NCBI GenBank assembly: GCA_904063045.1
Contig: CAJFCJ010000019.1
Location: forward strand, 2,433,700 to 2,497,699
Source: Dimorphilus gyrociliatus
Lineage: Eukaryota > Animalia > Annelida
Direction of reading: 5' to 3'
DNA: 64,000 nucleotides
The notes under the pieces are model-generated. The model did not search any database, had not been told where the DNA came from, and worked only from the letters and a program-made list of their open reading frames with translations. Of this stretch, positions 37,653 to 41,112 are shown piece after piece. Both the position numbers and the translations under genes were made by a program. Each line of letters starts with the position of its first letter. Position 1 is the stretch's first letter.

Positions 37653-40600
37653 ATGGATCGCTTAGAAAGTTTTAAACAAGCAATTCGCGCAACACTTACT
37701 TCGGCTAAACACGGACAGACTTTACCAGAGTTAAGGAAGAGTTTTCTTGAATTGGGGATTAGGCCTAACCCATTCGAAGAGATGAAGATTAGTGAAGTCG
37801 ACTTCTTCACAAAGTACCCCGATGTAGGTCGGATGGAAGTCCACAACGGTATACACGTGTTTTTTGCTATTCCAACGGCTCAAGACAAGCATATCCATAA
37901 AATGGTGCAACAACAGAAGAGGGGAAAACTTAAAAGTCTAACTAAGCGAATTGAAACTGCGAAAAGACTTGATACCAGAGGGAATTTTCGACCAGTTGTG
38001 AATTGTAGTATGCGAAATAGAAGATTTGCTTCAAACCGAGGTGGATCTCTTTCAAGGTAGTATTTCCTTAGAAATATATAATATTATTATATCAATTGTG
38101 ATTGTAGATCTAGCATGCCATCCAGAATGGCACTGAATGAAATTAGAAACAGAACAGTAAGTTACTAGAGCTTTGATTAAAAAATACAGTTAAATATTAA
38201 GCACTGATATTTAGAGCCAGCAAAAGTTGATGCCAAGCAGAAGCTTTCCTCCCAATACTAGAAGTGTATGTTGAAATTTTTGTAATAATTCTCGATTTTT
38301 ACTTTTTAATCTTGAAAGGGCACTTTTACGAGCTCAATAGGATCTAGGGAGAACACCAGCTCGACTGCGTCATACAGTTTAGTAAGTGTTTTAATTTGAA
38401 AGTTTCCGTAGTGTTGATGCACGTTTTCCTTACAGGCAAGAGGAAATACAACTACGTCAGCGTGTGTCAGAAGGTCTGATGTGGCTTTAGATATGGCCAG
38501 AAATAAAAATAATTCAAGTCAAGATAGCGAAGTAAGTATATTATCAATATTAGTCTTTTAAAATATCTAAGCAACTAATTCTTTGAAGATTTCATCAAGA
38601 AGTAGCTGTACTTCTTCAACATCAAGACTAAGGGTGTGTTTTCAAACTTAAAGAATGATAGAATTAAAATAACGAAATCTTTAATCCTATCAGGCTATCA
38701 TGAACGATCCCTTTCGTAATAAACCGACCGTAGCAACCCGAAGAGAAGTCAGTTAATTTTTATATTTTAAGTTAGTTTTACCGTTTTCATTACGTTTTGT
38801 AATAGGGTTCCCCGGTATTTAATTCTGGATGTGCTAGTCGTTCAAGTGAAAGTCATTACAATAGCCCCTCAGAAAATTTTTCTCGCGGTGTGCAAGCCAG
38901 AGGAACAGCTATTTCCGATAGGGAGAATAGGAATCCTTATAATATGAAAGATGATGAACGGGATATAAACCTCAGAAGAAATCTCGGTACTCCAGCACCT
39001 AAGAAATGTACGGTGATAGTTAATCCCGATGCATCAAGTAAGACTCTAGAATCTGAAAGTACTGGGAAGCGCAGTGCGACTTTATCAAGAATTCAACCTG
39101 CTCGAATCGAATTTGAACCCAAGTCCGATTCATCGAGACGAAAGCTAAATTCTTTGGAGAATTGTATTTCTGCTGATTCAGAAAGCAATAAATCGGTTGA
39201 AGTAAAACCACTGACTACGAGTTCTTTTCCTAGAAGACTATCATGTGAAAATAACATCTCTCAGGTTAATAAATCCTCAGAAAATTCTACACCAAAACGA
39301 GGTATTCCTTTTGAACGAATACGAAAATCCATCGAAAACCTTGATCTCTCTGATAACAACAAAGTTAATTCTATAGTTGTTAATCGAGTTAACCAGGATG
39401 AACATTTAGAGAAAAGAAACGATACCAGCATTTTGGATACTAAGAAACAAGTTTGAATTTTTACTTTTATTGAAAAAATTTACAAGTTATCTTCTTTAGG
39501 ATCTGGATGTTTTGGGTGATAACCTTCGTCAATTAGCCCTTCGGAATAGAAAGAATGAATCCGACAAATCGAGGGAGGTTTCTCTTGATAATATCAAGGA
39601 CATCACGGACCCACTTTGCTTGCCAGCAATAGATGCAAGTTTTTACTATCTATATTCAAGATAAATACAAAAGTTGCTGATTTAAAATCTATTTTTGTAG
39701 ACCCCAAAGGAAGCCTCAATTTCAGCATGCAGGAGAATGATTACAAACCATCTGGCTTTGAATAAAAGAAAAGTCATTTCATCTTTAAAATCGGTAAACA
39801 CTGCTTCTTTTCTAAGTTGAACGACACAGCTTATCTAATTGATCATTCAAAGAAATTAAATATGGTACTTTTTAGGAAAAGAATGAAGAGACAGACACAG
39901 TTGTAACTTCCAAGAAAATCGTACCTAGTGGAACACCTATAAGTAAATATTCTTAAGTCTATTCTCTATTAAGTGAAGTGGTTTATGAATTGCATCTCAG
40001 TTGCCTCCTTGTTATACTCACATTTACAACTGTGAGATTCATTAAGGTTCAAAATAAAAAATATGGTACACGGCTCTAAACATCATTATACCTGCCATTT
40101 TATTTGAATTTTTCTTTTTTCAATTATAATTTCACTGATCTTACTCATTTCCAATAGATAAGGGACCATCACAATTGGAACGCAATATTATGAACGCAAA
40201 ATTGAACGAAAATAGAGCACTAGGTAAATATATTTTGCAATAGTTTATAACAAAACACAAAACATTTGTAAAGAAACTTTAATTTTTTTCTTTATTCTTT
40301 CTATCTTTTATTAACAGGAAAGAACCATGTTTTGAATGAATTTTTCATTTGTGGTATACCACTTGGTACAACTGAACTGGAGTTGAGAACTTCTCTCTAT
40401 GATTATGGGTTTATAGAGAAAATGACTTTGAAAATGGGCTATGCTTTTGTGACATTTTCCTCAGCCGAAGAAGTAAGAGCTATTTTGAAAACACGATATA
40501 TAGATCTCAAAGGGACAAGAATTGAATGTAAAGAAATGCAAACAAGAGATAAGTTGCATCATGCAGTAGACAAATCTGAACCTTTATATGATGAATTCTT

Positions 40601-40814
40601 AGTGTATGTTAAAAGCGTACCAGCTTTCTGGTCGGATGAAAAGCTAAAGGATGTATTTTCGTCTTTTGGTAATGTAACTAATGTCGCTAATTCCAGAAAA
40701 GGTTATGGCTTTGTCTACTACGATAATAAGGATATTGCAGCTGCTGTTGTTAAACAAGGGACTTTGCTAGTGCAAAACGTTTTGTTGATGTTAGAAAAAG
40801 GAAGACGTCTTTAA
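37653..40814 (+). CDS. LOTUS (OST-HTH, extended type) + disordered linker + tandem RRM protein, 13 exons, about 754 aa
   Basis: N-terminus FKQAIRATLTSAKHGQTLPELRKSF..PNPFEEMKISEVDFFTKYPDV..IHKMVQQQK. Exons 37653-38056, 38108-38156, 38215-38265, 38319-38381, 38436-38531, 38589-38633, 38694-38747, 38806-39450, 39500-39634, 39701-39793, 39876-39942, 40158-40223 and 40318-40814 sum to 2265 nt in one open frame. RRMs have GYAFVTF and KGYGFVYY. Confidence 0.8.
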
Positions 40815-41112
40815 TAAACTTTGAACTTTTTGATAATGTTAATGTCTGATAGTCTGGTAACTTTACTTAGTTGAAGACCAGACAGTTCCTGTACAGAAGA
40901 GCAAAATAATTTTATACATTCCATTTTAACATTTAGTGATCGGAATATTTAATCATTTTCAATTGGTAATTTGCAGCTTTCATTTCACAAGCTCAGTTTA
41001 TTTAATGCTAAAAGATTAATCTGGAACTCACGTATATCATTATATTTTACTTAAATGTTGAATATGATTTAATATTCTATCGTGTATACTAACTCAGTTA
41101 TATACTACAAGG

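What the first reader, a model, noticed from the sequence alone, without database searches (positions are those of the whole stretch)
37653..40814. Extended-LOTUS + IDR + 2xRRM protein without Tudor: candidate new germ-granule scaffold
Hand splicing joins the LOTUS exon to the RRM exon through 11 small exons in one open frame of about 754 aa. The C-terminal helix IHKMVQQQK resembles the extended LOTUS of Oskar/TDRD5/TDRD7, which binds and stimulates the Vasa helicase. Those proteins pair LOTUS with Tudor or SGNH domains, and MARF1 pairs minimal LOTUS repeats with NYN and RRMs. A single N-terminal eLOTUS, a long S/R/N-rich linker and two C-terminal RRMs is an architecture I do not recognise. 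It could be an Oskar-analogous germ-plasm nucleator: LOTUS recruits Vasa, the IDR condenses and the RRMs select mRNA. That role is inference.
Basis: partly seen in the sequence, partly recalled or inferred. Interest (0 to 1): 0.75.

Follow-up and report, generated by a model that had tools for sequence, protein, structure and literature searches.

The report
Annelid eLOTUS–linker–double-RRM gene
A small marine worm carries a gene that joins a Vasa-binding-type LOTUS domain, copied from the TDRD5/7 germline family, to a long disordered linker and two RNA-binding RRM domains instead of a Tudor domain. The layout resembles insect Oskar, but its germline role is untested.

Summary

- **N-terminal domain.** Exon 1 fails Pfam OST-HTH but is a real extended LOTUS. 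Its profile finds only the N-terminal LOTUS of LOTUS+Tudor proteins (TDRD5-like). An AlphaFold model (pLDDT 84) best matches the Oskar LOTUS from the Vasa complex (Z 11.6), including the extra C-terminal helix. Both tested Vasa-contact positions are conserved (Ala13, Ile81).
- **C-terminal domain.** The last exon holds two canonical RRMs.
- **Linker.** About 476 residues are S/R/N-rich with net charge +34.
- **Conservation.** A related species keeps the same gene order under purifying selection.
- **Origin.** The LOTUS groups with the worm's own two LOTUS+Tudor paralogues, which suggests a lineage-specific duplicate that carries RRMs in place of Tudor.

**Limits.** No transcript could be reached, so "one gene" is an inference, which I put at about 0.88. 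LOTUS fusions to RRMs in general, and LOTUS+IDR scaffolds without Tudor (C. elegans MIP-1/2), are already described. Vasa binding and a germ-granule role are untested. I rate it a new variant of a known kind, of moderate interest.

The parts
37653..38056 (+). Exon 1 (134 codons + 2 nt). Residues 1-92 form the LOTUS domain, followed by a basic tail.
   Evidence: 72% identical ORF in a relative. Profile hits to N-terminal OST-HTH of LOTUS+Tudor proteins. AF2 pLDDT is 88-96 over residues 1-90.
37887..37919 (+). Residues 79-89 (KHIHKMVQQQK): the C-terminal alpha5 extension that defines an extended LOTUS. Ile81 is the equivalent of Oskar L228.
   Evidence: Helix 79-86 in the model. Aligned to Oskar up to residue 237 of 5nt7_A. 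Matches the family consensus HIxKMVxxQK.
37689..37691 (+). Codon of Ala13, the equivalent of Oskar A162 (Vasa-contact position, small side chain).
   Evidence: Mapped through the alignment. The numbering was checked on Oskar L199 and L228. Mutant data are in PMC5458760.
38108..38747 (+). Exons 2-7 (45-96 nt each) with introns of 51-60 nt: S/R/N/T-rich linker.
   Evidence: GT-AG borders and phases. e2 is conserved in the relative with the same junction phases.
38806..39450 (+). Exon 8 (215 aa): the main disordered block. A conserved island lies at residues 169-194 (39310-39387).
   Evidence: 36-39% identity to the relative, with a near-invariant island. No Pfam hit. No word-search hit.
39500..39577 (+). 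Exon 9 (donor at 39578). The open frame continues to 39661, but the later GT at 39639 is out of phase.
39701..39793 (+). Exon 10: a 31-aa conserved island in the linker with a basic NKRKV stretch.
   Evidence: 83% identity to the relative. dN/dS is about 0.05.
39876..40223 (+). Exons 11 (39876-39942) and 12 (40158-40223), the last linker exons, separated by the 215-nt intron 11.
   Evidence: GT-AG borders and phases. Not recognisably conserved in the relative.
40318..40814 (+). Exon 13: RRM1 (about 40338-40547), RRM2 (about 40596-40799), stop at 40812-40814. AATAAA at 40813-40818.
   Evidence: Pfam RRM_1 4.4e-17, two stretches. RNP1 and RNP2 motifs are conserved in the relative. PDB hits to PABP and hnRNP A1/A2B1 tandem RRMs.

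Best explanation
This is one protein-coding gene of about 735 aa in a compact annelid genome; an earlier scan note names the species as Dimorphilus gyrociliatus.

Shown:
- The N-terminus is a single extended LOTUS (eLOTUS) domain, homologous to the first LOTUS of TDRD5/TDRD7-type LOTUS+Tudor proteins.
- The C-terminus is a pair of canonical RRMs.
- The roughly 476 residues between them are S/R/N-rich, basic and poorly conserved, apart from three short islands.
- Both end domains are under purifying selection against a related species.

Inferred from the tree: the gene arose in the dinophilid lineage by duplication of an eLOTUS+Tudor gene, and the Tudor part was exchanged for RRMs.

Inferred mechanism, not tested:
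- The eLOTUS docks on the C-terminal RecA domain of the worm's Vasa helicase and stimulates its ATPase, as shown for Oskar, Tejas and Tapas.
- The RRMs hold single-stranded RNA.
- The basic disordered linker adds multivalent RNA and protein contacts.
Together these would make the protein an adaptor that brings Vasa to particular mRNAs, probably in germ granules or nuage. That logic is the same as Oskar's eLOTUS-linker-RNA-binding OSK layout.
For: LOTUS homology
- A profile of exon 1 plus its orthologue found 61 other proteins at E<=1e-3 among 1.84 billion.
- Every long hit except one repeat artefact carries Pfam OST-HTH at exactly the matched N-terminal residues. Most also carry TUDOR and none carries an RRM.
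- Named members are TDRD5 or TDRD5-like.
- PDB sequence search with exon 1 plus its orthologue alone gives TDRD5 3s93 at E 0.0019, then TDRD7 and Oskar. The family profile gives 3s93 at 1.7e-31 and Oskar at about 1e-10.

Fold
- AF2 pLDDT is 84 overall and 88-96 over residues 1-90.
- The Foldseek top hit is 5nt7_A, the Oskar LOTUS bound to Vasa, with 91 of 92 columns aligned.
- VIA-align gives Z 11.6, rmsd 2.4, model 1-90 against Oskar 148-237. The nine best chains are all LOTUS domains.

Interface
- Oskar A162 maps to Ala13 and Oskar L228 to Ile81. These fit the residue classes that Jeske et al. report (small at 162, small hydrophobic at 228); in Oskar, A162E and L228E abolish Vasa binding.

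Partner
- A locus with two CCHC knuckles plus a DEAD-box helicase lies at C7:4208761-4210236. Its C-terminal domain best matches Drosophila Vasa 5nt7_B (1.6e-54, against DDX3X at 7e-43). The equivalent of the invariant F504 is kept.

RRMs.

One gene
- All 12 introns are GT-AG and 10 are 49-94 nt long. The published median is 66 bp, and the species has no operons or trans-splicing (PMC7854359).
- e13 has no ATG before RRM1.
- Flanking genes are on the other strand. The order e1, e2, e8, e9, e10, e13 is kept in the relative, with the same junction phase at e1/e2; the phase at e12/e13 is inferred to be the same.

Selection: pN is 0.11 (LOTUS) and 0.28 (RRMs) against pS of about 0.8.

Origin: the tree places the gene in a clade (support 99/97) with the worm's two LOTUS+Tudor paralogues.
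Against: - No RNA evidence for the splice chain could be reached.
- A GT-AG chain also exists in every shuffled control.
- The e9/e10 junction needs a weak donor (GTTTCT), and exons 3-7, 11 and 12 are not recognisably conserved in the relative.
- Pfam OST-HTH does not hit exon 1 even at E<=1.
- In the worm's Vasa candidate the equivalent of F508, which Jeske et al. call strictly aromatic, is Leu.
- There are no expression, localisation or binding data.
- The tree rests on 104 columns and fast-evolving sequences, so the single dinophilid clade could partly reflect shared rate or composition.
Confidence: 0.55

Rival explanations
1. One gene with the same domains, but it does not work through Vasa or germ granules. 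The LOTUS could bind G-rich or G-quadruplex RNA, or a deadenylase complex as in MARF1. The protein would then be a general or somatic post-transcriptional regulator.
For: LOTUS domains bind G-quadruplex RNA (PMC7498356) and MARF1 LOTUS domains bind CCR4-NOT (PMC6168497), as seen in the abstracts listed. The F508 equivalent of the Vasa candidate is not aromatic. There are no expression data.
Against: By sequence, tree and fold, the LOTUS belongs to the TDRD5/7/Oskar extended class, not the MARF1 minimal class (5yad Z 7.3 against 5nt7 Z 11.6). It keeps both tested Vasa-contact positions. The genome has its own NYN+LOTUS MARF1-like gene elsewhere.
Confidence: 0.27
2. Two neighbouring genes were joined by hand: a LOTUS+linker gene and a separate small RRM gene.
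For: No transcript evidence. Chance GT-AG chains are easy to find. The largest gaps (123, 82, 215 and 94 nt) lie between e9 and e13. Met codons exist in e10 and e12.
Against: e13 has no ATG ahead of RRM1, so it must be spliced to upstream coding sequence. A promoter, 5' UTR and start would have to fit in 215 nt or less, in a species reported to lack operons and trans-splicing. e10 is the best-conserved linker exon and is in phase on both sides in both species. The same strand and order are kept in the relative, bounded by opposite-strand genes.
Confidence: 0.12
3. A decaying duplicate or non-functional chimera of a TDRD5-like first exon and an RRM fragment.
For: Restricted to two related taxa in the data searched. 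The linker evolves very fast.
Against: There are no in-frame stops or frameshifts in either species. Synonymous sites are saturated, while LOTUS residues 1-92 stay 80% identical and the RRMs 53% identical, with RNP motifs intact.
Confidence: 0.03

Closest known systems
TDRD5 / Tejas and TDRD7 / Tapas (LOTUS+Tudor germline proteins)
   Same: The N-terminal domain is homologous to their first, extended LOTUS. It has the same fold, the alpha5 helix, and the small residue and Ile at the two tested Vasa-contact positions. The nearest relatives of exon 1 are the worm's own LOTUS+Tudor genes.
   Different: There is no Tudor domain anywhere in the locus and no further minimal LOTUS repeats. Two RRMs sit at the C-terminus instead.
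Oskar (insects)
   Same: The same layout logic: one eLOTUS, a disordered linker, then a C-terminal RNA-binding domain. The best structural match is the Oskar LOTUS in the Vasa complex. Like Oskar, it is a lineage-restricted gene assembled around a TDRD-type LOTUS.
   Different: The RNA-binding module is a pair of RRMs, not the SGNH-like OSK domain. Sequence identity is only about 22%. No evidence of germ-plasm localisation or of LOTUS dimerisation.
MARF1 / Limkain b1
   Same: Combines LOTUS and RRM domains in one polypeptide.
   Different: MARF1 has NYN and RRM(s) N-terminal to many minimal LOTUS repeats that do not bind Vasa (PMC5458760). Here a single extended LOTUS comes first, there is no NYN, and the genome's NYN+3xLOTUS gene is elsewhere (C5:2820153-2823030).
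C. elegans MIP-1/EGGD-1 and MIP-2/EGGD-2
   Same: LOTUS plus long disordered regions without Tudor, acting as scaffolds that recruit the Vasa homologue GLH-1 (PMC8331183, PMC8616582; abstracts).
   Different: Those proteins have two LOTUS domains and no RRM. No sequence relationship beyond the LOTUS superfamily was seen.

Membership tests
LOTUS / OST-HTH superfamily | Match to the Pfam model PF12872 | tested here: not met
   No hit at E<=1 for exon 1. The six-frame genome scan at E<=10 also misses it. Two other members of the aligned family fail as well: 33 of 36 pass. This is an operational criterion, not a structural one.
LOTUS / OST-HTH superfamily | Significant profile homology to accepted LOTUS domains over the same residues | tested here: met
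   (best outside hit 3.3e-15). OST-HTH sits at the matched residues. PDB: TDRD5 3s93 at E 0.0019 with the two-sequence profile and 1.7e-31 with the family profile.
LOTUS / OST-HTH superfamily | Winged-helix LOTUS fold | tested here: met
   Predicted model only, pLDDT 84. The nine best VIA-align chains are all LOTUS, Z 7.7-11.6. Foldseek's best-ranked hits (5nt7, 3s93, 2lh9, 3rco) are likewise LOTUS domains.
Extended LOTUS (eLOTUS; Jeske et al. 2017) | C-terminal alpha5 extension after the wing | tested here: met
   Helix 79-86 with pLDDT above 90. Aligned to Oskar up to residue 237. Matches the family consensus HIxKMVxxQK.
Extended LOTUS (eLOTUS; Jeske et al. 2017) | Small residue at Oskar-162 and small hydrophobic residue at Oskar-228 | tested here: met
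   Ala13 and Ile81, also present in the relative.
Extended LOTUS (eLOTUS; Jeske et al. 2017) | Binds the Vasa C-terminal RecA domain and stimulates its ATPase | not testable with these tools
   Only the presence of a Vasa candidate with the F504 equivalent could be shown.
TDRD5 / TDRD7 | One or more Tudor domains C-terminal to the LOTUS | tested here: not met
   No PF00567 hit in the window among 35 genome hits. No Pfam hit in e8 or e9. The relative's locus also lacks one.
MARF1 | NYN nuclease, RRM N-terminal to tandem minimal LOTUS repeats | tested here: not met
   The only NYN hit in the genome is at C5:2820153. There is a single LOTUS here, of the extended type, and the RRMs are C-terminal.
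Oskar | C-terminal OSK (SGNH-like) domain | tested here: not met
   The C-terminal exon is RRM_1 x2, and no other Pfam family was found in e8 or e9.
RRM (PF00076) | Pfam score above the cut-off and aromatic RNP1/RNP2 motifs | tested here: met
   62.2 bits against a cut-off of 20.7, two stretches. RNP motifs are conserved between the species.

The most novel reading that the evidence does not exclude
Dinophilid annelids independently built an Oskar-like germ-plasm or nuage organiser. A duplicated TDRD5/7-type eLOTUS that recruits and activates Vasa was fused to a condensing basic linker and to RRMs that select mRNAs. This would be a second, convergent case of a lineage-specific germ-granule nucleator assembled around an eLOTUS plus an RNA-binding domain.
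Probability: 0.15. Interest if true: 0.85.

Novelty: new variant of a known kind. Interest (0 to 1): 0.5.

Why it matters
Germ-plasm organisers such as Oskar, Bucky ball and the nematode MEG/MIP proteins are lineage-specific, and none is known for annelids or other spiralians. This gene has the two features that make Oskar work: a Vasa-type eLOTUS and an RNA-binding domain. It was built from different parts and is traceable to a recent duplication of a LOTUS+Tudor gene. If it is expressed in the germline and binds Vasa, it would give a natural experiment in how such organisers arise by domain exchange. The host is a small, culturable worm with a compact genome. If it is not germline-expressed, it is simply one more LOTUS-RNA-binding fusion, a theme known since 2010.

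Tried and rejected
- **Pfam on exon 1** gave nothing, and the OST-HTH genome scan missed it. I did not take this as absence of a LOTUS.
- **Single-sequence AF2** of exon 1 was too poor to use (pLDDT 50.7). It was replaced by a 36-row alignment.
- **Word searches** with e8 and e13 found only the relative, or nothing. So neither transcripts nor wider orthologues were reached.
- **The GT-AG chain test** showed that a frame-keeping chain is not significant by itself, so I do not use it as proof. Its maximum-coding paths are not gene models.
- **Intron identity figures** are meaningless for AT-rich short sequences and were ignored.
- **A second, degenerate LOTUS** was sought in the other exons; none was found.
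- **A donor paralogue for the RRM module** was sought; only a weak hit turned up at C19:2353895. The Atlas and PDB give only generic tandem-RRM similarity.
- **AATAAA hexamers** are too common here to mark an internal 3' end.
- **Hit P0004** is a repeat artefact.
- **Joined protein left out.** A full-length fold and a length-matched architecture search were therefore not done.
Full report
**Setting.** The window is C19:2433700-2497699 of a 77.9-Mb, AT-rich genome in 349 contigs. An earlier scan note names the species as the miniature annelid Dimorphilus gyrociliatus. I did not verify the species independently.

**Gene model.** Reading the three forward frames gives 13 exons with GT-AG borders and consistent phases; coordinates are in the parts list.
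- The model totals 2208 nt, which is 735 aa plus the stop.
- Ten of the twelve introns are 49-94 nt. The others are 123 and 215 nt.
That frame stays open to 39661, but the GT at 39639 leaves phase 1. Exon 10 must start at 39701 in phase 0, because its first residues are conserved in the relative.
- Only the donor at 39578 fits. In the relative the same exon runs 50 codons to a strong in-phase GTAAGT. So either this species uses the upstream donor or the assembly has a small indel there.

I tested how much the chain itself is worth. A dynamic program that looks for any frame-keeping GT-AG chain found one in 100 of 100 dinucleotide shuffles of the interior. The chain alone is therefore weak evidence. 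The real coding length exceeds all shuffles, mostly because of exon 8 (z 3.2 here, 5.2 in the relative).

**Is it one gene?** No transcript could be reached. Word searches with e8 and e13 returned only a relative's genomic ORFs, or nothing. The 1.84-billion-protein search returned no spliced product. The case for one gene is indirect:
- Intron sizes are typical of the species.
- e13 has no ATG before RRM1, so it must be spliced to upstream coding sequence.
- No gap exceeds 215 nt, in a species reported to lack operons and trans-splicing.
- The neighbouring genes lie on the other strand.
- A related species (Logan assembly of SRR23372228, locus L009) keeps the same order between the same opposite-strand neighbours. 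The matches are e1 at 72%, e2, e8 at 38%, e9, e10 at 83% and e13 at 55% identity.
- The e1/e2 junction has the same phase in both species. The e12/e13 junction is inferred to be phase 1 in the relative as well, and e9/e10 is in phase there.

I put one gene at about 0.88.

**N-terminal domain.**
- *Pfam fails.* OST-HTH does not hit exon 1, nor does a six-frame scan of the genome at E<=10, although that scan finds other LOTUS genes.
- *Lead.* A language-model look-up pointed to LOTUS clusters (score 0.91).
- *Library search.* A profile of exon 1 and its orthologue (A1) was searched against 1.84 billion representatives. It gave 61 other proteins at E<=1e-3, nearly all matched at their extreme N-terminus. 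All 26 longer hits I scanned, except one repeat artefact, carry Pfam OST-HTH on the matched residues. Most also have Tudor, two have dsRBD, and none has an RRM. Of the 36 rows of alignment A2 (34 shorter hits, this exon and its orthologue), 33 pass OST-HTH and none has an RRM. Named members are TDRD5 or TDRD5-like.
- *PDB by sequence.* With A1 alone, six of eight hits at E<=10 are LOTUS domains, led by TDRD5 3s93 (E 0.0019, query 6-91). With the family profile, 3s93 scores 1.7e-31, TDRD7 and Tejas about 1e-19, and Oskar about 1e-10.
- *Fold.* AF2 with the 36-row alignment gives pLDDT 84, and 88-96 over residues 1-90. Foldseek ranks 5nt7_A first; this is the Oskar LOTUS in complex with the Vasa C-terminal domain, with 91 of 92 columns aligned. 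VIA-align gives Z 11.6, rmsd 2.4, 86 residues, model 1-90 on Oskar 148-237. It is followed only by TDRD7, TDRD5, Tejas and Oskar chains down to Z 7.7; the MARF1 minimal LOTUS scores 7.3.
- *Extension.* The helix at residues 79-86 is the alpha5 extension that defines the extended class (PMC5458760).
- *Interface residues.* I mapped Oskar numbering through the alignment and checked it on L199 and L228. Oskar A162 corresponds to Ala13 and Oskar L228 to Ile81. These fit the residue classes the paper reports for eLOTUS domains; in Oskar, A162E and L228E abolish Vasa binding.
- *No second LOTUS* is hidden in the other exons.

**C-terminal domain and linker.** Exon 13 has two RRM_1 matches (4.4e-17) with standard RNP1 and RNP2 motifs that are conserved in the relative. 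Its similarity to PABP, hnRNP A1/A2B1 and RBM14-like proteins is generic. No close paralogue exists in the genome.

The 476 linker residues are 16% Ser, 11% Arg and 10% Asn, with net charge +34 and mean hydropathy -0.98. They have no Pfam hit. They are poorly conserved except in e2, residues 169-194 of e8, the start of e9, and e10.

**Selection and origin.** Synonymous sites are saturated between the two species (pS about 0.8). By contrast pN is 0.11 for the LOTUS, 0.09 for e10, 0.28 for the RRMs and 0.48 for e8. The end domains are therefore constrained.

The genome holds two other eLOTUS genes:
- C19:970911-971276, an N-terminal exon followed by a second LOTUS and a Tudor at 968391-969101.
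- C7:2175468-2176484, LOTUS plus Tudor.

In a maximum-likelihood tree of 65 eLOTUS domains, these two groups and the LOTUS-RRM pair form one clade with support 99/97. The simplest reading is a lineage-specific duplication followed by loss of Tudor and gain of RRMs. The caveats are the 104 columns and the fast-evolving sequences. The genome's MARF1-like gene (NYN plus three LOTUS) is at C5:2820153-2823030, so this gene is not MARF1.

**Partner.** A locus with two CCHC knuckles and a DEAD-box helicase at C7:4208761-4210236 has a C-terminal domain that best matches Drosophila Vasa (5nt7_B at 1.6e-54, against DDX3X at 7e-43). The invariant F504 is kept, but the F508 equivalent is Leu. Bombyx Vasa shows Met in the same aligned column.

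**Comparison with what is known.**
- LOTUS fusions to RRM, KH, CCCH, S1 and dsRBD domains were listed in 2010 (PMC2848206).
- LOTUS+IDR scaffolds without Tudor recruit Vasa in C. elegans (PMC8331183).
- New here is a TDRD5/7-type eLOTUS followed by C-terminal tandem RRMs. It was seen only in this worm and one relative among the data searched. Many short hits are single exons from unspliced contigs, so absence elsewhere is not proven.
- The layout parallels Oskar: eLOTUS, linker, RNA-binding domain.

**What was left out.** Nothing in the window looked human.

**Verdict.** The domain interpretation is supported. The functional reading is plausible but untested. I class it as a new variant of a known kind, with interest 0.5.

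Noticed in passing
window 39578-39661: The exon 9 frame stays open 28 codons past the only in-phase donor, and the next GT (39639) is out of phase. In the relative, the homologous exon is 50 codons long with a strong in-phase donor (L009 9954-10103). This could be an alternative 5' splice site or a 1-2 nt assembly indel.
   Followed up: partly
window 39701-39793 and 39310-39387: Two short islands in the otherwise fast-evolving linker are nearly invariant between the species. They are exon 10, which has a basic NKRKV stretch and dN/dS of about 0.05, and residues 169-194 of exon 8. They are candidate binding motifs, a localisation signal or a helix.
   Followed up: partly
G000:C7:4208761-4210236 (L019): Vasa candidate (two CCHC knuckles plus a DEAD-box core). 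The equivalent of Drosophila F504 is Phe, but the equivalent of F508, reported as strictly aromatic, is Leu.
   Followed up: partly
G000:C17:972581-973900 (L001, L002, L004, L008): Four Pfam-positive LOTUS repeats lie in one 882-aa open frame, with no Tudor or NYN hit on that contig. This is another LOTUS-only gene whose identity was not worked out.
   Followed up: no
G000:C5:2820153-2823030: NYN followed by three LOTUS domains: the genome's MARF1-like gene.
   Followed up: partly
P0018 and P0033 (hits): Owenia fusiformis and another taxon have eLOTUS + dsRBD + 3-4 Tudor proteins. This is a TDRD variant with a double-stranded RNA-binding motif.
   Followed up: no
window 40813-40818: An AATAAA hexamer overlaps the stop codon of the gene, consistent with a very short 3' UTR. 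The hexamer is common in this AT-rich sequence.
   Followed up: no
Logan samples ERR14224704 and ERR14224705 (P0003, P0002): A further dinophilid-like sample carries near-identical copies of the two LOTUS+Tudor paralogues. Its DNA could not be fetched, so whether it also has the LOTUS-RRM gene is unknown.
   Followed up: partly
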